From Heteronotia binoei (taxonomy: Eukaryota), in NCBI RefSeq assembly GCF_032191835.1, contig NC_083228.1, positions 71,548,001 through 71,612,000 on the forward strand: a stretch of DNA of 64,000 nucleotides, given 5' to 3'. The notes beneath the pieces were generated by a model, which saw nothing but the letters and a program-made list of their open reading frames with translations, was not told the origin of the DNA and ran no database searches. A program made the position numbers and the translations under genes. Of this stretch, positions 1 through 60,705 are shown one piece after another; the first letter of the stretch is position 1; each line of letters starts with the position of its first letter.

Positions 1-697
1 AAAATCTGTTGACTCTTGATATTCTCTCCTCTTTTGTCTCACAGGCCAGGGAACCTCTCTCGGAATTTTCACCATGTTTCCAGCTATCATCATTGGTCTA
101 TCTCTTACTTGTTTTAAAATGTCATCTTTGGTCCTCTTTCTTGTAAATCTCAAATGAACTTCACTAGGCAGTTTATTTCGTCTTGTATAGCTCGAAGGTA
201 CCCATCTAACTTGGTCAAATTCTTCTTCCATCTTCTCAGGTGTCACCTGTAAGATTTCAGCCAAGGTTTCGCTTAGAATTTTCTGTAAATCTTCATTTTT
301 CTCTTCTGGTATGTTTTGAAACCTCAACATATATGCAGCTCTATCTACTTCCAGTTGTAAGATTCTAGAATCTTATGCTCTGTTCTTTTTCCAGATGTTC
401 CACCTTTTGAATATTCTCTGTCACCTGACCGTCTAGTACTTTTAAAGCCTTGTTGGTCTCAGCTGTCTGTCTGCTGTTCTCCAAAAGCTCTTTTTTAATC
501 TCTGCCATCTGTTCACCAATGTTATCTACTTTGCTTGTTAACTGTACTATAGCAGTCATTAAAGCAGTTTGCATTTATTTTATATTTCCTTGCATGGTCA
601 TAAATTTGCCTGGTCCAGATGGAGGGTTAGGTGAAAGAAATGTTTGCTTTCCTTCTTTGTTGTCTTTTCTTTTGACAGTTTCTTTGGGACCACTCAT
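1..697 (-). pseudogene. L1 ORF1p, disrupted by an in-frame TAA at 575-577 and a frameshift near 375
   Basis: Manual translation gives MSGPKET... a coiled-coil region, then after the frameshift LEVDRAAYMLRFQNIPEEKNE...EVPWPVRQKR. This matches LEMEKAAYILRFQNLPEEKNE...DVPWEVRQRR of the intact ORF1 at 55970. Confidence 0.9.
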
Positions 698-14087: not shown

Positions 14088-14215
14088 NNNNNNNNNNNNN
14101 NNNNNNNNNNNNNNNNNNNNNNNNNNNNNNNNNNNNNNNNNNNNNNNNNNNNNNNNNNNNNNNNNNNNNNNNNNNNNNNNNNNNNNNNNNNNNNNNNNNN
14201 NNNNNNNNNNNNNNN
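14088..14215. other. Assembly gap (128 N)
   Basis: Run of N in the sequence. Confidence 1.
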
Positions 14216-15180: not shown

Positions 15181-15472
15181 ATTGATTCTCTTGAAACAAC
15201 AACTGATGAAGGTTAAAGCAGAAAGTACAAAAACTGGATTACAACTTAAATTCAAGAAGATAAAACCAAGGACTATTGAGGAATTGCACATCTTTAAGGC
15301 TGATTATGAAGAAACTGAAATAATTCAAAATTTTCTATTCTTTGTTAAGTGTCACTGGCAAGCAAGATGAAGATAATTCAAACCATAGTATTTCCTATTA
15401 CTATGTACAGAGGTGAAAGTTGGATAATGAAGAAAGATGACAGGAAGAAAGTTGATTCATTTTAAATGTAGT

Positions 15473-15602
15473 TGTGACGGAAAGCAATGGGTTAACCATA
15501 AGCTGAAGACGCACAGGGCTGCGTCAGGTGACCTGAGCGTGGGGGCAAAGTGCTGAGAGCTCTCAGGGAGGGAAAGTAGTGGAAGGAGAGAAACTGCTGA
15601 GG
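15473..15602. repeat. Inverted terminal repeat occupying the position of the 3' LTR
   Basis: Base-by-base reverse complement of 21001-21130 with one mismatch (15538). Confidence 0.97.
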
Positions 15603-15605
15603 CAG

Positions 15606-15619
15606 TCCCTCCCCCTTTT
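15606..15619 (-). other. Polypurine tract (plus-strand primer site)
   Basis: Minus-strand AAAAGGGGGAGGGA followed by C-TG, ~160 nt downstream of the pol stop. Confidence 0.85.
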
Positions 15620-15779
15620 GAGACATTTCGCAAGGCGAAAGGTCTCAGCCTTTTGCTGAGCAATGGGACATGGGCACACTTGCTTGGGTTACACTATGTC
15701 ATAACTCTTTTGTCATAACACCAACTTCAAAATTATATACATTCTTCATCAGTTCTACAGTCTAACATCTTTTAAAATT

Positions 15780-17222
15780 TTACATTCTTCTTGATAGTGC
15801 ATCTGCTATCACATTTTGCTTTCCAGGGATATGCTGGATGTCAAAGTTGTAATCTTGGAGCTGTAAACTCCATCTTATCAGTTTGCTGTTCGTATCTTTA
15901 ACTTGGTTCAACCATTTCAGGGGAGAATGATCTGTACACAGTGTAAACTTCCTTCCCCATAGGTATGGTTTCAATTTACCTATTGCCCACACAATCGCTA
16001 AACACTCTTTTTCTATTACTGAGAGGTGTTGCTCTCGGTCCAATAACTTTCTACTCAGATACAGAACTGGATGATACAGTCCTTCCTCTCCTTGCTGACT
16101 TAGTGTTGCACCTACCCCAACATTAGATGCATCAGTAAAGAGGGTAAACTCCTTTGAAAACTCTGGAGTTCTCAACACTGGTTCAGTGGTCAAAACCACT
16201 TTCAGATGTTCATAAGCTTTTTGACACTCTGCATTCCAGTTTACTGGATCAGGGTTCCTCTTCTTGGTGCACTCACATAGCGGTGCTGCTATCGTGCTAA
16301 ACTCAGGTATAAACCTCCTGTAGTATCCTACTACGCCCAAAAATGCTCGTATTTGTTTCTTGGTTTTGGGTCTGGGCCACTCGTGTATGGCTTGCACCTT
16401 TCCCCAATCTGCTTTGATCTTACCTCCTCCTAGCACATGCCCTAAATACTTAACCTCGGCCATGGCTAGTTGACACTTAGATGCTTTGATGGTGAGACCC
16501 GCATCTTTCACTCGCTGTAACACAATGGCCACATGCTGCAAATGTTCGTTCCATGCAGCACTGTAAATAGCAATATCGTCAATATATGCAAGCACAAATT
16601 CTTTCAGTCCTACTAACATCTTATCAATTACTCTCTGGAATGTGGAGGGAGCATTCCTTGACCCAAATGGTAACACAGTAAACTCAAAGAGTCCCTCTTT
16701 GGTTACAAACGCTGTTTTCTGCTGATCTTTTGGATCCATAGCTACCTGCCAATAACCTTTTGTCAAATCTAAGGTGGTAATAAAATTGGCAGCTCCAGTT
16801 GTCTCGACCAACTCGTCTATGCGAGGCATTGGATACACATCTGGTACTGTGATTTTATTCAACCTCCTGTAGTCCACACAAAACCTCATAGTTTTGTCCG
16901 GTTTGGGTACTAGGACTACAGGTGAGGCCCACGGACTTTCTGATGGTACAATTAAACCCAATTTCAACATTTCTTCTACCTCCTGCTGTACATACTTGGC
17001 ATTCGGGCCGGTCACTCTATATGGTTGGAGTGCTACAGGCCTTGAATCCCCTGTGTCAATCTTGTGACACGCTATGTTTATCTTCCCTGGTACATCTGAA
17101 AAAATTGTTTTGTACCTTCCCACTATCGTTTGTAATTGGCCTCTTTGTTCTCCATTAAGAGAAGGGGCGAACTGAACCTCATTAATGGTTTCTTCCTGGG
17201 ATATTTCCCCCCAACCCGACAA
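15780..17222 (-). CDS. Gypsy reverse transcriptase plus RNase H; in frame with the upstream ORF after a single TAA
   Basis: SPWASPVVLVPK, RFCVDYRRLN, LDLTKGYWQ, LPFG, YIDDI, FTDAS, EKECLAIVWAI, TDHSPL and ADALSR. The track's start is a TTG directly after the stop, not a real initiator. Confidence 0.95.
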   Translation of the reverse strand: MSGWGEISQEETINEVQFAPSLNGEQRGQLQTIVGRYKTIFSDVPGKINIACHKIDTGDSRPVALQPYRVTGPNAKYVQQEVEEMLKLGLIVPSESPWASPVVLVPKPDKTMRFCVDYRRLNKITVPDVYPMPRIDELVETTGAANFITTLDLTKGYWQVAMDPKDQQKTAFVTKEGLFEFTVLPFGSRNAPSTFQRVIDKMLVGLKEFVLAYIDDIAIYSAAWNEHLQHVAIVLQRVKDAGLTIKASKCQLAMAEVKYLGHVLGGGKIKADWGKVQAIHEWPRPKTKKQIRAFLGVVGYYRRFIPEFSTIAAPLCECTKKRNPDPVNWNAECQKAYEHLKVVLTTEPVLRTPEFSKEFTLFTDASNVGVGATLSQQGEEGLYHPVLYLSRKLLDREQHLSVIEKECLAIVWAIGKLKPYLWGRKFTLCTDHSPLKWLNQVKDTNSKLIRWSLQLQDYNFDIQHIPGKQNVIADALSRRM

Positions 17223-20192
17223 TTAAGTTCCCTCACTCACTCCCTTCTTTGCAATTAACACCAAATTACCCCTGTCAAAATAAGGTTTTAGCATGTTTAC
17301 ATGGAACACTTTACATTGTTCACCATCTTCACTTAAATTCACAACATAGTTCACGTTGGAGACCTTATGGGCGATGGTATAAGGTCCCTCCCAGGCCACA
17401 TCTAACTTGTTCTTCTTCCTGGGCTTCAACACCAGTACTCTGTCTCCTGGCTTGAACTCTCTGTCTCTGGACTTGGAGTCGTACCACTGCTTCTGCCGTC
17501 GTTGCGATCTTCTCATGTTGTCTGCAGCAGCCGTCCTCACCTCCTGCAGATGCTGTTGTAGTTCGTGTAGGTAAGAGATGACATCTGTCTCCTGGATGTC
17601 CTCGTTCCCGGACCACGCCTCTTTCAGAACATCAAGGGGTCCTCTGGCTTGCCTTCCATACAACAGTTCAAATGGACTGAACCCGGAACTTTCTTGGGGT
17701 ACCTCCCTATACCCGAAGAGCAGGTGTTGCAACCTCTGGTCCCAATCGTTGGGATGCTTGTATGCGTAAGTCTTTAGCATATGGTTCAGGGTGCCATTAA
17801 ACCTTTCATTGAGTCCATTTGCTTGTGGGTGGTATGCTGTTGTGGTCACATGCCGGATTCCACAAGCTCTTAACAATTCTTGCATCACATTTGACATAAA
17901 TGTGGTACCTAAATCAGTCACCATCTCTTTTGGAAAACCCAATCTTGAAAACACAGTCAATAGGGCATCCGCTACTGTCTTTGCCTCAATGTCCTTAAGT
18001 GGAACCGCTTCTGGAAACTTGGTGGCATAATCAACGATGGTAAGGATGTACTTGTTTCCCCTTCTGGTCACTCTGGAGATAGGACCAACAATATCTACTC
18101 CTATCTTCCCAAAGGCTTCTGTGACTATAGGGACTGGCTGTAATAGACCGTTAGTTTTGTCTAGAGCTTTCCCCACCATTTGGCAGGCCTGACACGATTT
18201 GCAAAAAGCCCTTATGTCCTTGCCCATATTTGGCCAAAAGAACCGTTCTTGCACTCGGTCCCTTGTCTTATTGATGCCAAGGTGAGAGGCCATGGGTGAT
18301 GCATGAGCCAAATCCAACACTTGCATCCTATACTTTCTTGGAAGGACTAATTGTTTCTTTCTTTCCCATACTATGTTATGTTTTCTTTTTAAGGCCACCC
18401 GGTATAGTTTCTGGTCTATCACTTTAAATTGGCATGGGTGTTCAATTGTGATCTCATTATCACTCACCCCAGTTCTCTGCCATAGTTCCTTCAGGCTGTC
18501 ATCTTGTTGCTGCTCTCTGAGGAATTCTGCAGCAGGGATGGTCTGCAACATTGTTTCCTCTTCTTCTGCTGGTTGCTGTACACACACCTCAGTTGCTGCC
18601 TCTGGCCTGCTTCTTGTAACAATGTTGACAGGATTAGCTTGCTGTCTCTTTAACTCAGAAGCTAAATCATTGCCCAATAAAAGCGATGTTCCTATGTCAC
18701 TCAGGACTCCCACAATCCAATCACCTTGGAACTCTCTATACTTGATAGGAACTTCTGCCAGGGCCACTTCAAATGTAGGTCCTTTAATGCCTTTTATGGT
18801 GTAAGATTTCCCAGGCAAATACTGATGACTTTTTACTAATTCTGGCTGTACTAGGGAAACCTGCGCCCCTATGTCCCTATAAGCCTTGACTTCCTCGTCA
18901 TTTACTGTCACAGTCTCAGTATATTCCTCACTCAAGCTTTCCTGTACTTTCCACACCTTCAGAACACTATTGGGTCTTTCTGGTGGTGTGTTCTCTGGAA
19001 GTGAGGGGTTTGTTTCTACTTCTTTCTGTTGACCTTGCACCATTTTAACTGTCTTAGTTGGTGGGGTCTTTTTTCCTTTTTCTGGGCAAGTCCTGGCATA
19101 GTGCCCTATTGCCCCACATTGGAAACAAGCAGCCTGAGTCTTCCTGTATGGAGGTGGACTGTATCGCTTTGCAGGGTTGTTGTTATCCGCCCCAGACTTC
19201 TCTGGAGAGTTCCAGACTCGGGGTTTTTTAGTTGGAGCAGTCCACATTGATCTCCCTAGATCTGATTCAATCTCATCTAGAATCATAGCTGCTTCTTCTA
19301 CTGTCTTCAATTTCTTGTCTCTCAGAACCCACCTATACTGAGAGGGGACTTGGTTATAAAACTGTTCCAAGCCCACTAAGTTTTTCAGGTCCTCTAAAGT
19401 GGAAACTTTACTCCCTTCTACCCATCTGTTCAGGGCTCTGTCTAACCGACAACCTAGTTGAGAGTATGTTTCTCCAGGCTTTCTTCTGATTTCTCTAAAT
19501 TTTTTCCTGCTTTGCTCTGCTGTTAAGCCAAAGCGGACTCTGACCCTTTCCTTGTACAATTGATAATCAGAAGTTTCCTCATCCCTCAGTTCAGAGTAGA
19601 TTTCACTCAACTTTCCACAGATCTGAGGTCTCAAATAAATCATTCTGTCCTCATCAGCAACTCTTAAATCTTTACAGGTTCTTTCAAAATTAAACAAAAA
19701 AGCTTCTACATCATCCCCTTTTTGGTACTTGGGGAATTTCTTTTGTTCTACTGTGAGTCGCCTCTCACTTCTAGTATCACGTTGAAATTCTGGCTTTCCC
19801 TGAATCTCCTGGAGTTTCAAACTGTACATTTTTTCCTCATGTTCTCTCTCTCTATTTTCTCTCTCTGATTCCAGCCTAGCCATTTCCACTCCTCTCTCTG
19901 ATTCCAGCCTAGCCATTTGCAATTCTTTCTCTCTCTCTGCTTCCCTTTCTCTGTGTTCTCTCTCTGTTTCCAGCCTAGCCATTTGCAATTCTTTCTCTCT
20001 TTCTGCTTCTCTTTCCCTTTGTTCTCTCTCTGATTGAATTTTGGCCATCTGAATTTCTTTTTCTGCCTCTATTCTAGCCAATTCCAACTGTATTTTCATA
20101 GCCTCTATATTCTGACTAGGATTCTCCTCAGGAATCTCTTCTTGTGTCTGCCCATCCCCCGTGGCTGTGGTAGTTCTCTTAGGAGGAGCCAT
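17223..20192 (-). CDS. Gag (coiled coil, SCAN-like capsid, CCHC knuckle), aspartic protease and integrase
   Basis: SCAN-like RKKFRE...LEQFYNQVP...KTVEEAAMILDE; CFQCGAIGHYARTC; protease site DIGAQ (canonical D-T/S-G); HHCC zinc finger; D..D-35-E; C-terminal WEGPY module. The track's start is an alternative start codon. Confidence 0.95.
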   Translation of the reverse strand: MAPPKRTTTATGDGQTQEEIPEENPSQNIEAMKIQLELARIEAEKEIQMAKIQSEREQREREAEREKELQMARLETEREHREREAEREKELQMARLESERGVEMARLESERENREREHEEKMYSLKLQEIQGKPEFQRDTRSERRLTVEQKKFPKYQKGDDVEAFLFNFERTCKDLRVADEDRMIYLRPQICGKLSEIYSELRDEETSDYQLYKERVRVRFGLTAEQSRKKFREIRRKPGETYSQLGCRLDRALNRWVEGSKVSTLEDLKNLVGLEQFYNQVPSQYRWVLRDKKLKTVEEAAMILDEIESDLGRSMWTAPTKKPRVWNSPEKSGADNNNPAKRYSPPPYRKTQAACFQCGAIGHYARTCPEKGKKTPPTKTVKMVQGQQKEVETNPSLPENTPPERPNSVLKVWKVQESLSEEYTETVTVNDEEVKAYRDIGAQVSLVQPELVKSHQYLPGKSYTIKGIKGPTFEVALAEVPIKYREFQGDWIVGVLSDIGTSLLLGNDLASELKRQQANPVNIVTRSRPEAATEVCVQQPAEEEETMLQTIPAAEFLREQQQDDSLKELWQRTGVSDNEITIEHPCQFKVIDQKLYRVALKRKHNIVWERKKQLVLPRKYRMQVLDLAHASPMASHLGINKTRDRVQERFFWPNMGKDIRAFCKSCQACQMVGKALDKTNGLLQPVPIVTEAFGKIGVDIVGPISRVTRRGNKYILTIVDYATKFPEAVPLKDIEAKTVADALLTVFSRLGFPKEMVTDLGTTFMSNVMQELLRACGIRHVTTTAYHPQANGLNERFNGTLNHMLKTYAYKHPNDWDQRLQHLLFGYREVPQESSGFSPFELLYGRQARGPLDVLKEAWSGNEDIQETDVISYLHELQQHLQEVRTAAADNMRRSQRRQKQWYDSKSRDREFKPGDRVLVLKPRKKNKLDVAWEGPYTIAHKVSNVNYVVNLSEDGEQCKVFHVNMLKPYFDRGNLVLIAKKGVSEGT

Positions 20193-20295
20193 TTCTGACA
20201 GGAATTTTTCACAAATCTGTCCTAATTCCTTTACTGCAGTGTCCCTCTACTTTCTGTGTCTCTTAGTGACACTTAGTTTGGGGTTTTTCTTCAAG

Positions 20296-20313
20296 ATCCC
20301 ACCGCTGCCACCA
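20296..20313 (-). other. Primer-binding site complementary to the tRNA-Leu 3' end
   Basis: TGGTGGCAGCGGTGGGAT, 5 nt after the LTR-terminal CA. It is complementary to the 3' ...AUCCCACCGCUGCCACCA of tRNA-Leu; the isoacceptor assignment is from memory. Confidence 0.85.
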
Positions 20314-20318
20314 ATTAT

Positions 20319-21130
20319 TGCAGCGCCCGCCTCAAGGCCTCACTGGATCTCTGTATTTTCGTCTCTTCGGGGTATTTTACTTGTTCTGTTGATGGGACCA
20401 CAGCAGCCTTGTTTATTCTTCCCCATAAAATATATAGGCTCATGAGAACTTTAACTTAAACCACAGATTTATTGTAACAAAAAGTCTTAAACTGGGGATA
20501 TGGGAGATATTTACACAGGCTTATACTTTGTTCTGTTGTTTCAGGCTTTACATTCACTTTTCCTTTTGTTTTGCATCTTTCACAGTTACACAGTTCACCT
20601 TTCACTCACTCTCCACCTCTAGCCAAGGTCTGGCCTCTTGGGATTGATGTGTCTAGTCTCACCCCTCGACTGGAGTCTCTCCTCTCAGCCCTTCTTGGTG
20701 TTTCAGACCCACATCCACTCCCTCAACCTCCTCACTAGATCTTCAGAGTGGTTCCTAGGTGTTTGTGACTGTTCCGGTCTTAACTGACTCACACACACAC
20801 AGCCCTCTTGGCTGGTTTTGTCCAGCTGGCAGTCTCTGGAAGACTTCCCCGTCTCCATCTCCAGCTTCTTCACAGGATCAGCTGCCCTCTCAGCCCTTCT
20901 GGCTGGCACTAACTGACCCTCTCAGTCTCTGTCAGGTCCCCACTGACAGACTTTTCTGACAGGCCTCCACTCTGTCAGACATCAACTGACTGAACTCCTA
21001 CCTCAGCAGTTTCTCTCCTTCCACTACTTTCCCTCCCTGAGAGCTCTCAGCACTTTGCCCCCACCCTCAGGTCACCTGACGCAGCCCTGTGCGTCTTCAG
21101 CTTATGGTTAACCCATTGCTTTCCGTCACA
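20319..21130 (-). promoter_or_regulatory. 5' LTR (~812 bp, TG...CA)
   Basis: Starts TGTGAC and ends GCTGCA just before the PBS. Contains minus-strand AATAAA at 20468-20473 and 20412-20417, and TATA-like motifs near 20520 and 20430. Confidence 0.85.
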
Positions 21131-21236
21131 GTAGTGTTGGAGGAGTTTTACAGATACTGTGGACCATCCAAAAGACCAATAAATAGGTCCTAAATCAAAT
21201 TAAGTCTAAACTCTCCTAAAAACTAAAATGACTGCA

Positions 21237-21438
21237 GAGGGACTGTGGCTCAGTGGAAAAAACATCTGCTTAGCATGCAGAAAGTCCCAGGTGCAATCCC
21301 CAGCAGGACCAGGCAATAGATGAAGTGAAAGACCTCTACCTGAGACCCTGGAGAGCTGTGCCAGTCTAAGTAGACAATACATTACATTAGTGATCAATGG
21401 TATGATTCATTATAAGGCAGCTCATGTGTATTCATGTG
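21237..21438 (+). mobile_element. tRNA-derived SINE, second family, diverged
   Basis: A box TGGCTCAGTGG and degenerate B box GGTGCAATCCC. Body similar to 21506-21733. Confidence 0.75.
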
Positions 21439-21505: not shown

Positions 21506-21733
21506 GGAGGGATGGTGGCTCAGTGGTAGAGCATCTGCTTGGTAAGCAGGAAGGTCCCAGGTTCAATCCCCGGCATCTCCAACTAAAAAGGGTCCAGGCA
21601 AATAGGCATGAAAAACCTCCGCTTGAGACCCTGGAGAGCCACTGCCAGTCTGAGTAGACAATACTGACTTTGATCGACTGAGGGTCTGATTTCAGAATAA
21701 GGCAGCTTCGTATGTTCATATATGTTCATATAT
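21506..21733 (+). mobile_element. tRNA-derived SINE, second family
   Basis: A box TGGCTCAGTGG, B box GGTTCAATCCC, and a tail of repeated (tatgttca). Confidence 0.8.
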
Positions 21734-22539
21734 AATGCTAGGAAAAGAGGAAAAGATCCAACACAAGATGGATTGACTCAATAAAGGAAGCTGTGGCCTT
21801 CATTTTGCAAGACCTGAGCATGTCTGTCAACAATAAGACATTTAGGAAGTCATTAATTCATAGGGTCACCGTAAAGTTGGAAGTAACTTTGATACTTAAC
21901 TCACACATACATTGTATTTAAAACCATATGTGGACGTTTTTAAAATTGAAAGCCATGAAACAAAAGCAACTAAAAAAACAGAAACAAAATAAATAACTTT
22001 TAGAAACATTTCCTTATGCTGGTTTATCACAACTAGAGCACAGATTGCTGCAATTACAAGCAAAACATATATTCAATCCAATAGGGATGTGTGATTAGTT
22101 ATGTCTGGGCTGATAAAAAAAATACCTTACTGATGGGTGTGTGTGTATTTTTAAAGCATAACACACGTTAGGGAATCTCCTGAATGCAAAGAAATAATAA
22201 TTTTTTAAAAACCCATAGGCTTTATTTGGAATTTCAGGAAACCGGCTGGTGAAGTTCTTTAGGCTTCCCCCGCTCTTTAGGGAGGGGGCATATGTACTAC
22301 CATAGGTTCTGTTGTACTTGCAAAAGTGCATCCCCTTGCCCAGGTTAACATTAGTTCTGTTAAGGCTTGCCATGTTGGCTTGTGGTTGTGCTGGGATTTC
22401 TTGGTGCTGTCTTGCTTCTGCTGAGCTTGTTGCTGGTTCTTGCATGGAAGACATTGACTAGTGGTTGTTGCAGGCTTGCCTCTTTAGTTTTGCTCTGAAG
22501 AAAGCAAGACTTTGCACCTCTCATTGGAACCAATGGAAG

Positions 22540-23041
22540 TAGTGTTGTCAAGTCCAATTCAAGAAATATCTGGGGACTTTGGGGGTGGAGCCAGGAGACA
22601 ATGGGGGGTGGAGCCAGGAACAAGGTTGTGACAAGCATGATTGAACTCCAAAGGGAGTTCTGGCCATCACATTTAAAGGCACTGCACACCTTTTAAATGC
22701 CTTTCCTCCATTGGAAATAATGAAGGATAGGGGCACCTTCTTTTGGGGCTCATAGAATTGGACTCCCTGGTCGACTCCTTTTGAAACTTGGAGGGTCTTT
22801 TGAGGAGAGGCACCAGATGCTATGCTAAAAATTTGGTACCTCTAGCTCAAAAAACAGTTCCCCCCAGATACCCACAATCCATTCTATATTATACTCTATT
22901 GGAATCGGTTTCCATAGCAATTAATAGAGTGCCCAGCAGACATTTTCCTCCCCCGCCCCTGCTTTCTGATGGCCTTAAAGTGGGGGGGAGGGCCTCCAAA
23001 CCAGGGGATCCCCTGCCCCCACCTGGGTATTGGCAACCCTA
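22540..23041. mobile_element. Non-autonomous hAT element (TAGGGTTGCCA-type TIR, Blackjack-like)
   Basis: Ends tagtgttgtca / tggcaaccta with a perfect 8-bp TSD AATGGAAG at 22532-22539 and 23042-23049. A partial copy in the opposite orientation lies at about 34790-34996. Confidence 0.85.
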
Positions 23042-27868: not shown

Positions 27869-29205
27869 TCTCTCTCTCGGCTTGGCTTCGCGAACGAAGA
27901 TTTAAGAAGGGTGCAATAGTCCACGTCTGCTGCAGGCTCGCTGGTGGCTGACAAGACCAATGCGGGACAGGCAGGTCCGGCCACAGTGGCTGCAGGGAAA
28001 AGTCTGATTTAGGGTTGGTGCTGTAGCAGTGCGATTCTTCCTCAATCTCCTTTTGTCCTCAAGACCAGCTATGCGTGCGTTCTCAAAGGAAGAGACAGCC
28101 TGGTGGATGGTGTGTCTCCATGCTTTGCGATCTGAGGCTAGGTCGGACCACTGGTGAAGGTTGATGCGACAGGTACCAAGGGATTTCTTCAAGGAGTCCT
28201 TGTACCTCTTCTTTGGTGCTCCTCTATTTCGATGGCCGGTGGAGAGTTCGCCATACAGGGCAATCTTGGGAAGGCGGTGGTTTTCCATCCTAGAAATATG
28301 CCCTGACCAGCGCAGCTGCGTCTTCAGCAGCAGTGCCTCGATACTGGTAACCTCCGCCCGCTTGAGGACTTCAGTGTTGGTCACAAAGTCACTCCAGTGG
28401 ATGTTGAGGATGGTGCGAAGGCAGCGCTGATGAAAGCGCTCGAGGAGTCGCAGGTGATGACGGTATAAAACCCACGATTCGGAGCCGTAGATGAGGGTTG
28501 TCATCACAACCGCTTTGTAAACATTGATCTTTGTGCCTTTTTTCAGATGCTTGTTGCTCCACACTCTTTTGTGCAGTCGGCCAAATGCACGGTTTGCCTT
28601 TGCCAGCCTGTTGTCAATCTCCTTGTCGATCTTGGCATCTGAGGAGATGATGCACCCCAGGTAGCTGAACTGCTGGACTGTCTTCAGAACTGATTCACCC
28701 ACAGTGATGCAGGGAGGGTGATAATCTTCCTGGGGTGCAGGCTGGTGGAGAACTTCTGTCTTCTTCAGACTAACTTCTAGGCCGAATAGCTTGGCAGCCT
28801 CTGCAAAGCAGGACGTCATATGCTGCAGAGCTGATACCGAGTGGGAGATGAGTGCAGCATCATCAGCAAACAGTAGCTCTCGTATGAGTTTTTCCATCGT
28901 CTTGGAGTGGGCCTTTAGTCGCCTCAGGTTGAACAGGCTGCCATCGGTGCGATAGCAGATGTAGACACCATCGTCATCATCTAGATCTACTGCGGGTCCT
29001 TGAAGCCTCATGCTAAAGAAGATCGTAAAGAGAGTTGGCGCGAGAACGCAGCCTTGCTTTACACTGTGCCTATTGGGAAGGGCTCCGAGAGGTCGTTGCA
29101 GTGTCTGACTTGGCCTTGCTGGTCTTTGTGTAGCTGGATGATCATGCTGAGGAACCTTGGGGGACATCCTAAACGTTCCAAGATTTGCCACAGGCCTTTC
29201 CTGCT
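27869..29205 (-). mobile_element. Young 5'-truncated RTE-clade LINE (non-BovB type)
   Basis: VKQGCVLAPTLF, YRTDGSLFNLRRL, LLFADDAAL, FSYLG and C-terminal CSHC...HQRAC. One frameshift near 29062; upstream it reads KGLWQILERLGCPPRFL. (GA)n tail; inserted in a (TA)n tract. Confidence 0.92.
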
Positions 29206-55969: not shown

Positions 55970-56980
55970 ATGGGTCCCAAAAAGTTTGGGCAAGGTACCC
56001 CCTCACCAACCCCTGGGGGAGGGGGAAAATCAATACCAGAAGCAACAAATCAAGATGCCATTGAGAAATTGCAAAACTTAGTGACGGCTGGGTTTAGGCA
56101 AAACCAAGAAGTGTTAGAGACGATGAAAGCAGATTTAATGGGCCAGATAATGAAAACAAACAGACAAGTTGAGGAATTCCAAAAGCAGTTATTAGTGAAT
56201 ACCCAACAAATGCATAGTTTGGCCGCTAAAGTGGACAAAATAGCTGAAAGTGAGAAGGAGATGGCCAACACAACCCGAGAAAATAAAACAAGGATGACCA
56301 ATCTGGAGGAAAGAGTTATAAAGTTAGAGATGGAAAAAGCAGCGTATATATTGCGCTTTCAAAATTTACCTGAGGAAAAGAATGAAAATATAATAGAAAA
56401 AATCTCGGAACTGCTGACCTTTGAAGATGATCAATGCCTGGAGGAGGGAAGGAGAGACATTGAGTGGGCCAGAAGAATATCCTCCAACTACACGAGGAAG
56501 TATAATTTAGCAAGAGAGGTGCAAGTGAAATTCACCCACCTCGCAACATGTGAAAAGATTTTGAAAAAAGTTAAAGAACAGGGACTGAAGTGGAAGGATG
56601 CCAACATAAAAGTGTTGAAAGATGTGCCCTGGGAAGTTCGTCAGCGTAGATCCAAATATCGTAAATTAACAATCTGGTTGATGAAGCATTCAGTGCAATT
56701 CAGATGGTTAATCCCAGAAGGGGTTTTCTTTATATATCAAACCAGAAGACATAACATAACATCGTTGGAAAAATTAGAGGAATTTTGGGATCAATATGTG
56801 GATCTAAGTAGTCGTGAATCGGAGACGGGAGATGAACAAGAAGAGCAAGAAGAGGAAGACGGTCGAAGTAAAGTAGAAGAGGGCGCTGTGCAGAAGCTGT
56901 GGAAAGAAGGAGTTAAGACAAGGACCCGAACTAAAAAAGCTCAGGAAACATATTCTGATAGTATTGATTTGCTAAAATGA
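55970..56980 (+). CDS. L1 ORF1p (coiled coil, RRM-like, CTD, acidic tail), 336 aa
   Basis: Open ORF upstream of ORF2 with heptad-like N-half and ILRFQNLPEE / VLKDVPWEVR motifs. Confidence 0.92.
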   Translation: MGPKKFGQGTPSPTPGGGGKSIPEATNQDAIEKLQNLVTAGFRQNQEVLETMKADLMGQIMKTNRQVEEFQKQLLVNTQQMHSLAAKVDKIAESEKEMANTTRENKTRMTNLEERVIKLEMEKAAYILRFQNLPEEKNENIIEKISELLTFEDDQCLEEGRRDIEWARRISSNYTRKYNLAREVQVKFTHLATCEKILKKVKEQGLKWKDANIKVLKDVPWEVRQRRSKYRKLTIWLMKHSVQFRWLIPEGVFFIYQTRRHNITSLEKLEEFWDQYVDLSSRESETGDEQEEQEEEDGRSKVEEGAVQKLWKEGVKTRTRTKKAQETYSDSIDLLK

Positions 56981-59900
56981 ATACCAGGTTTGGAATGCAG
57001 ATCACTTCAGTTAACGTGAACGGCTTGAATGACCCAAGAAAAAGAAGAAGGATATTCCAACAACTTAGGAAAACAGCATCTTCAATAATTTGTCTGCAGG
57101 AGACGCATATTCAAGAAAAAGATATAAAATATTTACGAAATGAAAAATTAGGCACGCTCTACCATTCATCTGACCCAGAAAGGAAAAAAAAGGGGGTAGC
57201 AATATATGTATCTAAGTCTATCCAATCTAGCTGTTTATATTCAGATAAGAAGGGAAGAATAGTGATGGTAGAGATAGAATATTGTGGAAAGAAATTGATA
57301 TTAGTTAACATTTATGCCCCCAATGAAAATCTTGCAAAATTTTACAAAACTCTGCATAAAAAATTGATGGAATTTGAACTTAAGAACTGCTGTATTATAG
57401 GTGACTTTAACGCGGTCTTCGACACAGAAAAAGACAAAAAATTTGAAGAACAAAAAAAAAGGAAATTGAGATGTAGTTTACCCAAAGAGTTCTTAAAACT
57501 AGCTGATGAGTTTAATCTAGTAGACGTGTGGAGAACAAAGAACCCTGCAACCAAGGACTATACTTATTTCTCTTCTGCACATAGGTGCTGGTCGAGAATT
57601 GATATGTGTTGGTTGGCGGCTGACTTAATGTTATCTGTTCAACAGGCAGATATTTTACCTAGTACATATGCTGATCATAATCCGATCCAGATTAATCTAA
57701 TAGGTACAGTGAAGAGCTCACGGTGGACGCTTAATTTGCAAATTCTTAAGGAAACAAAGTTTCTGGAGGCAACAAAGAAAGAAATAAAGGAATTTTTTCA
57801 GCACAACCTAACCAAAGATACCAGTATGCACATCATTTGGGATACATTCAAGGCTTTTTTTCGTGGGATTGCAATAAAGTATACAGCAGGGAGGAAAAAA
57901 GAACGTTTGAAGACCTATAAGGATTTGGTTCAAAAACTAAGCGAACAAGAGCAGCAGTTAAAGATAAAGAATATAGAAGAAATAAGATTAAAGATTTCAG
58001 CTATTCAACACCAAATTAACCTAATACTAATGGAAGAAGTAGAAAAGAAGATGAAATGGATGAGACAAACTCACTTTGAAAGTGCAAACAAAGCCAGCCG
58101 ATGGCTAGCATACAAACTAAAAAAGGAAAGAAGTAAAAAAATCATAAAATCGCTTAAAGATGAAGAAGGAAAGGAGACAACACAAACCAGCCAGATGAAA
58201 ATAATAATTCAAAGCTTTTATCAAAAATTATATAGGGGTCAAGAAATCCCCAACCAGTTACAAGAAGATTATATTGCAAAGACTAAATTTAAACAGTTGA
58301 CGCAAGAACAAAAAGAAAAACTAGAAGTTCCAATAACCATGCACGAGATTGGAGAAGCGATTAGCCAACAAAAGACGAATAAAGTACCAGGACCGGATGG
58401 TCTCCCCATTGAATTTTATAAAGCGTTTGAAGGAGATCTGCTCATCCCGTATAAAAACGTAATTGATGAGGTGCAAAAGAACGGTGGAATACCAGCATCT
58501 TGGAAGGAAGCACTTATTACCTTGATACACAAAGAAGGTACAGACCCAGCGGAAGTAAAGAATTATAGACCTATCTCGTTGCTAAACAGTGATTATAAAG
58601 TTTTCGCTACGGTGCTGGCAAACAGACTTAAAAAAGTTATAAGTGCGGTTGTCCATGAAGACCAAACGGGCTTTGTGCCAGGTAGACAAATGAAACAAAA
58701 TGTGAGATTTTTAATGAATACTCTTGAATACTACAAGGAACATCCTGAGAAGCAGGTGGCTTTAATATTTGTAGACGCGGAAAAAGCCTTTGACAATGTT
58801 AATTGGAATTTTATATTGAAATCATTGGAGGCAGTAGGTTGTGGAGGGAATTTCCGTGGACTGGTGGAAAATATATACACAGAACAAAATGCAAGGATTA
58901 GCTTTAATAATACTAAAACAGACTTAATCGCGATAGCACAGGGTACAAGACAAGGCTGCCCCTTATCGCCATTATTATTTATATTAACACTAGAGCTGTT
59001 AACTCAAAGAATAAGGAATGAAGATCAAATAAGAGGTATTAAAATTAGGGGAGAAGAGCTGAAGATCCAAGCCTTTGCAGATGATTTGCTGTGTATTCTA
59101 GAGGACCCCAATGTATCTATTGAAGAACTGAAAGAATCATTAAAACAATATGGACATGTATCGGGACTCAAAATTAACGCGCAGAAGACGAAATTTTTCA
59201 CAAAAAATATGAATAAAGAGCAAATTGACCAATTTGAAGCTAAATCAGAATTCGCATATGGGAAAAAAGTGAAATATTTAGGAATCCAAATGACTAGTGA
59301 ACTTAAAGACCTGTACCGGGACAATTATGAGAAACTAATAAAAGAAATTCAAGAGGATTTAAACAGATGGCAAGATTTGCATATCTCTCTTCTGGGCAGG
59401 ATTGCAACTATTAAAATGAATGTGTTGCCAAGAGTATTATTTCTCTTCCAGATGATTCCTATTATGCTTCCAAAGAAATTTTTCCAACAATTGAACAAAA
59501 TAATCCTATCATTCATATGGCAGAATAAAAAACCCAGAATCAGGTTAAAAGTATTGCAGGACAGTAAATTGAGAGGTGGGCTGGCCTTGCCAGAATGGAA
59601 CTTGTACCACAAGGCTAGTCGGATAACTTGGCTAATAGAGTGGATTGTATTGAGAAATAAAAGAATGTTGACCTTGGAGGGGGCAGGTTTGGGGAGAGGG
59701 TGGCATGGATATCTTTGGTACCAAAGCCCCCCACCAAATAGTCTATTTTGGAGACATGAAATAAGGAAATCCCTCTTTAGGGCTTGGATGGATATTAGAA
59801 AGTTCTATTTCTACACCCAACTGTGGTTATCACCAGTAGAGGCTCACACTCATCCCAATCTTTATGATTGGAATAACCTAAATGACTATCAAAATCTATT

Positions 59901-60705
59901 AGATGAACAGAACAACTTGAAAGCGGAAGAAATGACCCAATTAGATTGGTGGCTGAAATGTCAAATACAAGTAAGTTATCAAAAAGATAAAGAAAAAGGG
60001 TTTACTAAGAAACTAAACGACCTTGACCAAATTATTCTGACAGACCAGAAACTAGTCTCCAAAATCTATGAATGGTTACTACGGGAGAAAATGCAGGGAG
60101 AGGTAGTCAAGGAATCTTGGATAAAGTGGTTAAGAGACTTTGGGTTTAATATTAATTTGGACGACTGGGAACAAATATGGAAACGAAACATAAAACTAAC
60201 TACGTCGGCCTTGTTTAAGGAAAATTTATACAAAATGATTTACCGCTGGTACCTAACACCAGACCGACTAGCGAAAATATACCCCAGCTACTCCAACAAA
60301 TGTTGGAAATGTAAAAAGACTAAAGGTTCATTATTTCACATTTGGTGGAACTGTGAGATTGCCAAAAAATATTGGGCGTCAATTAATATGTGGATCCAAA
60401 AGATCTTAAAAATTAAGATACGCCACTCCCCAGAATTATTTCTTTTAAATATCTGTAGAGAGAACCTTCCACCAAAAACGATTAAGGTATTAATGTATAT
60501 TGTGACTGTTGCTAGATTACTATTTGCTAAATATTGGAAGACGCCTCAAATCCCTTCTAGAGAAGAGTTTATTGTCAAACTTATGGAAGCGGTGGAGTCG
60601 GACCTAATGACGACAAGGTTACGTGAAGGCAATTTACAAAAATGTAAAGAGACTTGGGAACCAATATATTGTTGGGTAAAAAGTAAAGGACTAATATGGG
60701 AATAA
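56977..60705 (+). CDS. L1 ORF2p (APE endonuclease, RT, CCHC), 1242 aa, uninterrupted
   Basis: NVNGL, LQETH, GDFN, SRID, ADHNP; YRPISLLNSDYK, DAEKAFD, GTRQGCPLSP, FADD; CWKC...HIWWNC. Confidence 0.97.
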   Translation: MNTRFGMQITSVNVNGLNDPRKRRRIFQQLRKTASSIICLQETHIQEKDIKYLRNEKLGTLYHSSDPERKKKGVAIYVSKSIQSSCLYSDKKGRIVMVEIEYCGKKLILVNIYAPNENLAKFYKTLHKKLMEFELKNCCIIGDFNAVFDTEKDKKFEEQKKRKLRCSLPKEFLKLADEFNLVDVWRTKNPATKDYTYFSSAHRCWSRIDMCWLAADLMLSVQQADILPSTYADHNPIQINLIGTVKSSRWTLNLQILKETKFLEATKKEIKEFFQHNLTKDTSMHIIWDTFKAFFRGIAIKYTAGRKKERLKTYKDLVQKLSEQEQQLKIKNIEEIRLKISAIQHQINLILMEEVEKKMKWMRQTHFESANKASRWLAYKLKKERSKKIIKSLKDEEGKETTQTSQMKIIIQSFYQKLYRGQEIPNQLQEDYIAKTKFKQLTQEQKEKLEVPITMHEIGEAISQQKTNKVPGPDGLPIEFYKAFEGDLLIPYKNVIDEVQKNGGIPASWKEALITLIHKEGTDPAEVKNYRPISLLNSDYKVFATVLANRLKKVISAVVHEDQTGFVPGRQMKQNVRFLMNTLEYYKEHPEKQVALIFVDAEKAFDNVNWNFILKSLEAVGCGGNFRGLVENIYTEQNARISFNNTKTDLIAIAQGTRQGCPLSPLLFILTLELLTQRIRNEDQIRGIKIRGEELKIQAFADDLLCILEDPNVSIEELKESLKQYGHVSGLKINAQKTKFFTKNMNKEQIDQFEAKSEFAYGKKVKYLGIQMTSELKDLYRDNYEKLIKEIQEDLNRWQDLHISLLGRIATIKMNVLPRVLFLFQMIPIMLPKKFFQQLNKIILSFIWQNKKPRIRLKVLQDSKLRGGLALPEWNLYHKASRITWLIEWIVLRNKRMLTLEGAGLGRGWHGYLWYQSPPPNSLFWRHEIRKSLFRAWMDIRKFYFYTQLWLSPVEAHTHPNLYDWNNLNDYQNLLDEQNNLKAEEMTQLDWWLKCQIQVSYQKDKEKGFTKKLNDLDQIILTDQKLVSKIYEWLLREKMQGEVVKESWIKWLRDFGFNINLDDWEQIWKRNIKLTTSALFKENLYKMIYRWYLTPDRLAKIYPSYSNKCWKCKKTKGSLFHIWWNCEIAKKYWASINMWIQKILKIKIRHSPELFLLNICRENLPPKTIKVLMYIVTVARLLFAKYWKTPQIPSREEFIVKLMEAVESDLMTTRLREGNLQKCKETWEPIYCWVKSKGLIWE

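What the first reader, a model, noticed from the sequence alone, without database searches (positions are those of the whole stretch)
15468..21135. Gypsy retroelement with terminal INVERTED repeats instead of a 3' LTR, integrated as a unit
Seen: a full 5' LTR, PBS, gag-pol and PPT, but after PPT-C-TG comes the reverse complement of the first 130 bp of the 5' LTR (129/130 identical). Both termini therefore present the same U3 end (TGTGAC...). A perfect 5-bp TSD (GTAGT) flanks them, and the interrupted BovB-like LINE is restored when the element is removed. Established: canonical LTR elements need direct repeats (R) for strand transfer. DIRS elements have inverted ends but use a tyrosine recombinase. 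Ginger DNA transposons combine a Gypsy-type integrase with TG-starting TIRs and lack RT. Inference: this is either (a) a family with non-canonical replication (the RNA could form a 5'-3' panhandle, or the DNA could be cut-and-pasted by its integrase, a Gypsy-to-Ginger-like intermediate), or (b) a one-off event such as a template switch after PPT priming, pairing of two U3 ends in one intasome, or inversion of the 3' LTR between its TG/CA ends plus a ~680-bp deletion. The junction TGC also matches the reverse complement of the LTR end, so the last model fits too.
Basis: partly seen in the sequence, partly recalled or inferred. Interest (0 to 1): 0.92.

Follow-up and report, generated by a model that had tools for sequence, protein, structure and literature searches.

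The report
Retrotransposon copy with two U3 ends
A nearly intact Gmr1-type Gypsy retrotransposon sits in a decayed LINE with a clean 5-bp target duplication, but an inverted copy of the first 130 bp of its 5' LTR replaces its 3' LTR; this is most likely a single mis-made DNA copy that the integrase still inserted, a rare fossil and probably not a new kind of element.

Summary
The arms at 15473-15605 and 20998-21130 are inverted repeats, 131/133 identical (129/130 over the first 130). GTAGT flanks both ends. Database LINE proteins align without gaps across the reconstructed empty site.

The element lies on the minus strand and is 5,658 bp long. It has an 812-bp 5' LTR, a PBS, gag-PR-like-integrase, one in-frame stop, RT-RNase H and a PPT.

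The inversion junction lies 0-3 nt after the PPT, where plus-strand DNA starts. The outer end is exactly U3 position 1. These coincidences point to an error during reverse transcription: a template switch at the PPT/U3 border gave a linear DNA with two U3 ends, which integrase inserted. They argue against a later chromosomal rearrangement.

Three related elements (Zootoca, Podarcis, Lepidochelys) all have direct LTRs. No copy of this family was reachable: the best protein hits are 50-70% identical. The decisive census of copies (family or one-off) therefore could not be run. A Ginger-like lineage with inverted ends is not excluded but is unlikely (about 5%).

The parts
15468..15472 (.). Target-site duplication, left copy (GTAGT)
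   Evidence: Read directly. Identical to 21131-21135.
15473..15602 (-). 3'-terminal arm: reverse complement of positions 130..1 of the 5' LTR (start of U3). On the + strand it reads TGTGACGG... outward-in.
   Evidence: 129/130 identical to 21001-21130, with one mismatch at LTR position 66.
15603..15605 (-). Junction trinucleotide CTG (sense). It can be read as C + TG (the normal start of U3 after the PPT) or as the complement of LTR 133..131 with one mismatch, giving 2-3 nt of microhomology.
15606..15619 (-). Polypurine tract AAAAGGGGGAGGGA
   Evidence: It is the last purine run of 12 nt or more before the terminal repeat and lies 160 nt after the pol stop.
15780..17222 (-). ORF2, 480 aa: reverse transcriptase (about 16910-16434) and RNase H (about 16238-15849)
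   Evidence: Pfam RVT_1 4e-38, RT_RNaseH 3e-38, RT_RNaseH_2 6e-34.
17223..17225 (-). Single in-frame stop codon between the integrase and RT parts of an otherwise continuous frame
   Evidence: The 70%-identical relative P0018 reads through this position, with homology on both sides.
17226..20192 (-). ORF1, 989 aa: gag (SCAN-like capsid, CCHC knuckle), a protease-like stretch, and integrase (H2C2 zinc finger, DDE core, SH3-like C-terminus; about 18341-17280)
   Evidence: Pfam SCAN 6e-11, zf-CCHC 3e-4, Integrase_H2C2 4e-21, rve 2e-13, SH3_Tf2-1 2e-9. No Pfam protease hit; LLGNDL is shared with relatives.
20296..20313 (-). Primer-binding site TGGTGGCAGCGGTGGGAT, 5 nt after the LTR end
   Evidence: The Zootoca relative has TGGTGGCAGCG in the same place. 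Complementarity to the 3' end of a tRNA-Leu is from memory and was not tested.
20319..21130 (-). Complete 5' LTR, about 812 bp, TGTGACGG...GCGCTGCA. TATATA at position 695 and AATAAA at positions 658 and 714. Purine-rich 93-121; hairpin-rich 120-220.
   Evidence: The inner boundary is inferred from the CA + spacer + PBS layout.
21131..21135 (.). Target-site duplication, right copy (GTAGT)
15343..15467 (+). Interrupted host LINE (BovB/RTE-like ORF2 C-terminus, decayed), left part
21136..21233 (+). The same LINE, right part. It continues the reading frame of the left part when the element and one GTAGT are removed.

Best explanation
This is one copy of a Gmr1-like Ty3/Gypsy LTR retrotransposon that was made wrongly during reverse transcription and then inserted normally. 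Near the end of DNA synthesis, a plus strand that had passed the PPT by about 3 nt (C, T, G) left its template. It continued on a PPT-primed plus-sense U3 strand at about position 130-133 and ran off that strand's 5' end at U3 position 1. Equivalently, two 3' ends primed each other across a 3-nt overlap. The result was a linear DNA with a full LTR on the left and an inverted 130-bp U3 start on the right, so both ends carried the same TG...CA U3 terminus. The integrase joined both ends to a staggered 5-bp cut in a LINE.

Shown here: the structure, the TSD, the clean insertion, the domain order, and direct LTRs in relatives. Inferred: the template switch, its direction, and that the copy had a canonical parent. 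The copy lacks a 3' R and a poly(A) signal, so it should not replicate further. Its single stop codon is about what neutral decay since insertion would give.
For: (1) Both breakpoints fall on functional boundaries. The inner junction lies 0-3 nt after the PPT, which is the plus-strand start site. The outer end is exactly U3 position 1, next to an intact TSD. A DNA end at U3 position 1 is the mark of PPT priming and of integrase processing.
(2) A perfect 5-bp TSD and gap-free LINE restoration show one integrase-type insertion of the whole 5,658-bp unit. The Zootoca relative also makes a 5-bp TSD and starts TGTGAC.
(3) The junction has the short, imperfect microhomology typical of template switching. 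CTG pairs with LTR 131-133 TAG as C:G, T:A and G:T, which also accounts for the mismatch at position 131.
(4) LTR 120-220 is unusually structured as single-stranded DNA (z = -3.55). The breakpoint sits in the loop of the first hairpin, LTR 120-147. Structured templates are known pause and switch sites.
(5) Three relatives have direct LTRs, so direct LTRs are the norm in this group.
(6) An LTR-element integrase needs little more than TG...CA ends in vivo. Ty1 integrase inserts foreign fragments with 5-bp TSDs (PMC2939329).
(7) No R repeat and no AATAAA lie between the pol stop and the 3' end; the next AATAAA is about 480 nt out in the flank.
(8) From the arm divergence, 0.9-1.8 new stop codons are expected under neutral decay, and one is seen.
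(9) No other LTR fragment occurs in the 64-kb window.
Against: No other copy of this family could be examined, so a canonical parent is assumed, not shown. The exact path cannot be told from one product: which strand switched, whether the partner was RNA or DNA, and whether one or two genomes were involved. Several steps need a second, normal synthesis in the same particle. The hairpin at the breakpoint is small (5+4 bp). No frameshift has accumulated, which is slightly better preservation than neutral decay might give. I found no published case with this exact structure. The only hit was a passing remark about a guppy foamy-like ERV with 'inverted LTR' (PMC5210030).
Confidence: 0.68

Rival explanations
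1. Two-molecule integration. The U3 ends of two separate cDNA molecules were inserted together at one site. The two free inner ends were then joined by host end-joining, with loss of most of the second molecule and of the 3' LTR of the first.
For: This also gives two U3 ends, a 5-bp TSD and a junction with short microhomology. Concerted integration from two donor molecules is usual in vitro (my knowledge, not tested here).
Against: End-joining breakpoints should be random. Here one lies within 3 nt of the PPT/U3 border of a 5.6-kb molecule. That is unexplained unless the first molecule was an intermediate ending there.
Confidence: 0.08
2. Later chromosomal rearrangement. A canonical copy was inserted, and afterwards its 3' LTR was rearranged. 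Either the first 133 bp were inverted in place and the remaining 679 bp deleted, or the whole LTR was inverted and about 680 bp deleted.
For: The junction TGC also matches the reverse complement of the LTR end...TGCA. Replication-based template switches can produce inversion with deletion.
Against: Two or three breakpoints would have to fall exactly on LTR boundaries (U3 position 1, the PPT border, the LTR end next to the TSD) while leaving the TSD untouched. That is very improbable for random breaks. No displaced LTR piece is found nearby.
Confidence: 0.07
3. Family-level feature. This is a lineage of Gmr1-like elements that moves with inverted U3 ends, either by integrase-driven DNA transposition (a Gypsy-to-Ginger-like intermediate) or by an unknown replication route.
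For: TIRs of 130-133 bp that start TGTGA fit the TGTNR pattern of Ginger and Gypsy termini. Ginger1 may descend from a Gypsy element (PMC2836005). The integrase ORF is intact. No census of this family could be made, so the model is not excluded.
Against: One arm is embedded in a complete 812-bp LTR with PBS, PPT, gag and RT-RNase H, which is the anatomy of a retroelement. There is no 3' R or poly(A) signal. Retroviral-type integrases are not known to excise integrated DNA (my knowledge). Relatives have direct LTRs. There is no second copy and no short ITR-bounded derivative in the 64 kb.
Confidence: 0.05
4. Assembly artefact: a chimeric join inside a repeated LTR.
For: LTR repeats are hard to assemble. 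An N run lies 1.25 kb to the left (14088-14215).
Against: The left host-GTAGT-TGTGACGG junction is a unique sequence. It cannot be produced from the right junction, whose reverse complement reads ACTAC-TGTGACGG. The inner junction shares only 2-3 nt between its partners, too little for a graph mis-join. The structure is not a simple fold-back. The TSD and the LINE restoration fit a real insertion.
Confidence: 0.05

Closest known systems
Gmr1-like clade of Ty3/Gypsy LTR retrotransposons (Metaviridae)
   Same: Integrase lies upstream of RT-RNase H, the trait that sets Gmr1 apart from other Gypsy elements (PMC8220671). Gag is SCAN-like. The element has a PBS, a PPT, TG...CA ends and a 5-bp TSD. 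The nearest proteins are reptile, turtle and amphibian elements with the integrase C-terminus fused to RT.
   Different: This copy has no 3' LTR; an inverted 130-bp U3 start stands in its place. Relatives in Zootoca, Podarcis and Lepidochelys have direct LTRs.
Ginger1 and Ginger2/TDD DNA transposons (Gypsy-integrase-related transposase)
   Same: Terminal inverted repeats of 40-270 bp that begin TGTNR, a short TSD, and an integrase-type DDE enzyme with an H2C2 finger (PMC2836005).
   Different: Ginger elements lack RT, RNase H, gag, PBS and PPT, and mostly make 4-bp TSDs. They are multi-copy families. This element has all the retroelement parts, a full LTR at one end, a 5-bp TSD and only one known copy.
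DIRS retrotransposons
   Same: A retroelement with inverted terminal repeats.
   Different: DIRS elements use a tyrosine recombinase, carry an internal complementary region and make no TSD. This element has a DDE integrase, no recombinase domain and a 5-bp TSD.
Defective retroviral or ERV integrants formed by reverse-transcription errors
   Same: A one-off aberrant product that is still integrated. One guppy foamy-like ERV insert is reported to have 'inverted LTR' (PMC5210030). Ty1 integrase accepts any TG...CA-ended DNA in vivo and makes 5-bp TSDs (PMC2939329).
   Different: I found no described case with a U3/U3 integrant whose breakpoint lies at the PPT and which keeps an intact TSD.

Membership tests
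Ty3/Gypsy, Gmr1-like clade | Pol encodes RT, RNase H and a DDE integrase of the Gypsy type | tested here: met
   Pfam RVT_1, RT_RNaseH, RT_RNaseH_2, Integrase_H2C2, rve and SH3_Tf2-1, all above the curated cut-offs.
Ty3/Gypsy, Gmr1-like clade | Integrase lies upstream of RT (Copia-like order in a Gypsy-type RT) | tested here: met
   ORF1 ends with integrase and ORF2 (RT-RNase H) follows in the same frame. The definition comes from PMC8220671. Relatives have the integrase SH3 domain fused to RT.
Ty3/Gypsy, Gmr1-like clade | RT groups with reference Gmr1 elements in a phylogeny | not tested
LTR retrotransposon (any) | Two direct long terminal repeats | tested here: not met
   There is one 812-bp LTR only. 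The other end is an inverted 130-133-bp U3 start. This holds for the present copy; the family's normal state is unknown.
LTR retrotransposon (any) | PBS after the 5' LTR, PPT before the 3' end, TG...CA termini, short TSD | tested here: met
Ginger DNA transposons | TIRs starting TGTNR and flanked by a short TSD | tested here: met
   133-nt inverted arms that start TGTGA. The TSD is 5 bp, whereas Ginger mostly makes 4 bp and TDD makes 5 bp (PMC2836005).
Ginger DNA transposons | No reverse transcriptase or RNase H; transposase only | tested here: not met
   RT and RNase H are present and open, and gag, PBS and PPT are present.
Ginger DNA transposons | Multiple copies bounded by the same TIRs, or excision footprints | not testable with these tools
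   The source genome is not in any searchable collection. There is no second copy in the window.
DIRS | Tyrosine recombinase in place of a DDE integrase; no TSD | tested here: not met
   No recombinase domain was found and a DDE integrase is present. A 5-bp TSD is present.

The most novel reading that the evidence does not exclude
The copy belongs to a lineage of Gmr1-like elements that has begun to move as DNA bounded by inverted U3 ends, using its own integrase. That would be a living intermediate on the proposed route from a Gypsy retrotransposon to Ginger-type DNA transposons.
Probability: 0.05. Interest if true: 0.9.

Novelty: new variant of a known kind. Interest (0 to 1): 0.45.

Why it matters
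If it is a one-off, it is a natural record of two things usually seen only in test tubes. One is a plus-strand template switch at the PPT border that inverts part of U3. The other is an LTR-element integrase joining two identical U3 ends in a living germ line, with a normal target duplication. It also warns annotators that LTR finders, which demand direct repeats, will miss or mis-call such copies. If other copies share the junction, it would be the first retroelement caught turning into an inverted-repeat transposon, which bears on the origin of Ginger elements.

Tried and rejected
(1) Same-family copies. A self-BLAST of the element against the window found only itself and its inverted arm. 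Three protein searches (ORF1, ORF2, last 150 aa of ORF2) gave best identities of 50%, 70% and 64%. An exact look-up of ORF1 found nothing on record. An exact scan of metagenome contigs for the first 31 nt of the LTR gave 0 matches. The census of direct versus inverted ends therefore could not be done. I did not scan the bacterial genome or viral collections, where a reptile element is not expected.

(2) The closest relative by RT (P0018, Logan SRR13336341, L002) is only about 71% identical in DNA and covers internal sequence only, so it says nothing about termini.

(3) Literature searches for inverted LTRs and for integration from two U3 ends returned almost nothing relevant.

(4) Autointegration was considered and rejected on paper. 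Neither the inversion nor the deletion product of an intramolecular integration places a forward PPT next to an inverted U3 whose position 1 faces outward.

(5) Strand-displacement snap-back was rejected. It would give U3(1-130) followed by its inverse, and the forward copy is absent.

(6) DIRS-type and Penelope-type explanations were rejected on enzyme content and on the TSD.

(7) ARAGORN found no tRNA gene that could test the PBS, only a SINE head.
Full report
The repeat finder reports one strong inverted pair in 14.5-22.5 kb: 15473-15605 against 20998-21130, 133 nt, 98% complementary. Base by base, the only mismatches are at LTR positions 66 and 131. The first 130 nt are therefore 129/130 identical, and similarity ends abruptly after position 133. 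GTAGT lies directly outside both termini, at 15468-15472 and 21131-21135. A BLAST of the element against the whole window finds no other copy or LTR fragment.

2. ANATOMY.
The element is on the minus strand and is 5,658 bp long. In the sense direction it contains:
- an LTR of about 812 bp (21130 to 20319; TGTGACGG...GCGCTGCA);
- a 5-nt spacer;
- a PBS, TGGTGGCAGCGGTGGGAT (20313-20296);
- ORF1 (20192-17226, 989 aa);
- one in-frame stop (17225-17223);
- ORF2 (17222-15783, 480 aa);
- about 160 nt of 3' untranslated sequence;
- a PPT, AAAAGGGGGAGGGA (15619-15606);
- CTG (15605-15603);
- the reverse complement of LTR 130..1 (15602-15473).

Pfam places a SCAN-like capsid domain, a CCHC knuckle and a complete integrase (H2C2, rve, SH3-like) in ORF1, and RT plus RNase H in ORF2. 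No Pfam protease model matched, but ORF1 has a protease-like stretch between gag and integrase that shares LLGNDL with relatives. Integrase therefore precedes RT. Hundreds of vertebrate proteins with the integrase C-terminus fused to RT are the best matches. The 70%-identical relative P0018 reads through the position of the stop, with homology on both sides. The stop therefore looks like a lesion, not a designed boundary. I give no repair.

3. IT WENT IN AS ONE UNIT.
The flanks are a decayed BovB/RTE-like LINE. A 38-aa piece just left of the insertion found 193 database proteins at E of 0.001 or better. Of 12 tested, 11 align without a gap across left flank + one GTAGT + right flank...VDSF*M*CWRS against ...IDAFELWCWRR. 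A second LINE in the window also aligns across the junction. Removing the element and one GTAGT thus restores the target exactly, which is the hallmark of a single integrase-type insertion.

4. RELATIVES ARE CANONICAL.
- The nearest ORF1 relative is from Zootoca vivipara (P0001, 50% identity). It sits between direct 767-bp LTRs that are 99.87% identical. Its LTR starts TGTGAC, its TSD is the 5-bp CCATC, and its PBS begins TGGTGGCAGCG.
- A Podarcis locus has direct 489-bp repeats around the coding region.
- A Lepidochelys locus has direct 372-bp repeats around the coding region.
Direct LTRs, a 5-bp TSD and the TGTGAC terminus are thus the norm in this group.

5. THE FAMILY CENSUS COULD NOT BE DONE.
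No protein above 70% identity exists in the 5.8-billion-protein collection. ORF1 itself is not on record. The LTR start has no exact match in metagenome contigs. Whether other copies share the junction therefore remains open.

6. WHAT THE JUNCTIONS SAY.
The inner junction lies 0-3 nt past the PPT, where RNase H leaves the plus-strand primer and plus-strand DNA begins. The outer end is exactly U3 position 1, the 5' end that PPT priming creates and that integrase recognises. Random chromosomal breaks would not be expected to hit these boundaries and also leave the TSD intact. An error during reverse transcription explains both.

The junction CTG can be the normal C+TG that follows the PPT. It pairs with LTR 131-133 (TAG) as C:G, T:A and G:T, which also accounts for the mismatch at position 131.

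As single-stranded DNA, LTR 120-220 folds into a row of hairpins (z = -3.55). The breakpoint lies in the loop of the first hairpin, LTR 120-147, which is a plausible pause and invasion site.

The simplest path is that a plus strand which had just passed the PPT switched onto a PPT-primed plus-sense U3 strand and ran off its 5' end. That gives a linear DNA with two U3 ends. Integrases of LTR elements need little beyond TG...CA: Ty1 integrase inserts foreign TG...CA fragments in vivo with 5-bp TSDs (PMC2939329). The template switch, its direction and the number of templates involved are inference.

7. CONSEQUENCES FOR THE COPY.
TATATA lies at LTR position 695 and AATAAA at 658 and 714. Transcription should therefore start near position 720, and U3 1-130 would not be in the RNA. 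This weakens the panhandle idea. No AATAAA and no R repeat lie between the pol stop and the 3' end; the next AATAAA is about 480 nt out in the flank. The copy should therefore be unable to make the first strand transfer. The arms differ by 0.8-1.5%. At that age, neutral decay predicts 0.9-1.8 new stop codons in 4.4 kb, and one is seen.

8. RIVALS.
- Two cDNA molecules each giving a U3 end, followed by end-joining. This leaves the PPT-border breakpoint unexplained.
- Rearrangement of a canonical copy after integration. This needs several exact boundary coincidences, and no displaced LTR piece is nearby.
- A lineage with inverted ends (Ginger-like). This cannot be excluded without the census, but it conflicts with the full retroelement anatomy, with the relatives, and with the known inability of retroviral-type integrases to excise.
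- Misassembly. The left junction is unique sequence, and the inner junction shares only 2-3 nt between its partners.

9. VERDICT.
The best reading is a one-off aberrant Gmr1-like integrant with two U3 ends (confidence about 0.68). It is a new variant of a known kind. Interest is moderate, with a small chance (about 5%) of the much more interesting family-level reading. A genome-wide BLAST would settle that quickly.

Noticed in passing
window 55970-60705 (+): An apparently intact two-ORF LINE. ORF1 is 336 aa with no Pfam hit. ORF2 is 1,242 aa with an AP-endonuclease domain and RT. The two ORFs overlap by 4 nt.
   Followed up: partly
window 21237-21422 and 21507-21707 (+): Two tRNA-derived SINE-like units, about 73% alike, lie just right of the insertion. 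They interrupt the same LINE before its ...SYLGHIMR end. ARAGORN calls the head of the second unit a tRNA-Thr.
   Followed up: partly
L001 9150-14633 (Zootoca vivipara, OY735916.1): The closest relative has perfect direct 767-bp LTRs and an open gag-PR-integrase ORF, but no RT-RNase H. Only about 800 bp lie between the integrase stop and the 3' LTR, and they include a 452-bp repeat that also occurs at 22383-22820. It is annotated as an uncharacterized cellular protein.
   Followed up: partly
L003 7038-14071 (Podarcis lilfordi): This relative has direct LTRs, and gag-PR runs almost straight into RT. No integrase match was found, and RT-RNase H is split by an insertion of about 2.2 kb.
   Followed up: no
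window 20911-21011 (LTR positions 120-220): U3 carries several copies of CTGACAG / CTGTCAG, which are reverse complements of each other, and folds into a row of hairpins (z = -3.55). U3 93-121 is purine-rich and repeats the last 8 nt of the PPT, GGGAGGGA.
   Followed up: partly
window 19842-20087: The gag N-terminus contains imperfect 33/66-nt tandem repeats that encode ...EREKELQMARLE... units.
   Followed up: no
window 14088-14215: A run of 128 N lies 1.25 kb left of the element.
   Followed up: no
window 27902-29191 (-): Remnant of a different LINE RT ORF (429 aa). Its C-terminal motif LERFHQRCLR aligns with the insertion-site motif of the interrupted LINE.
   Followed up: no
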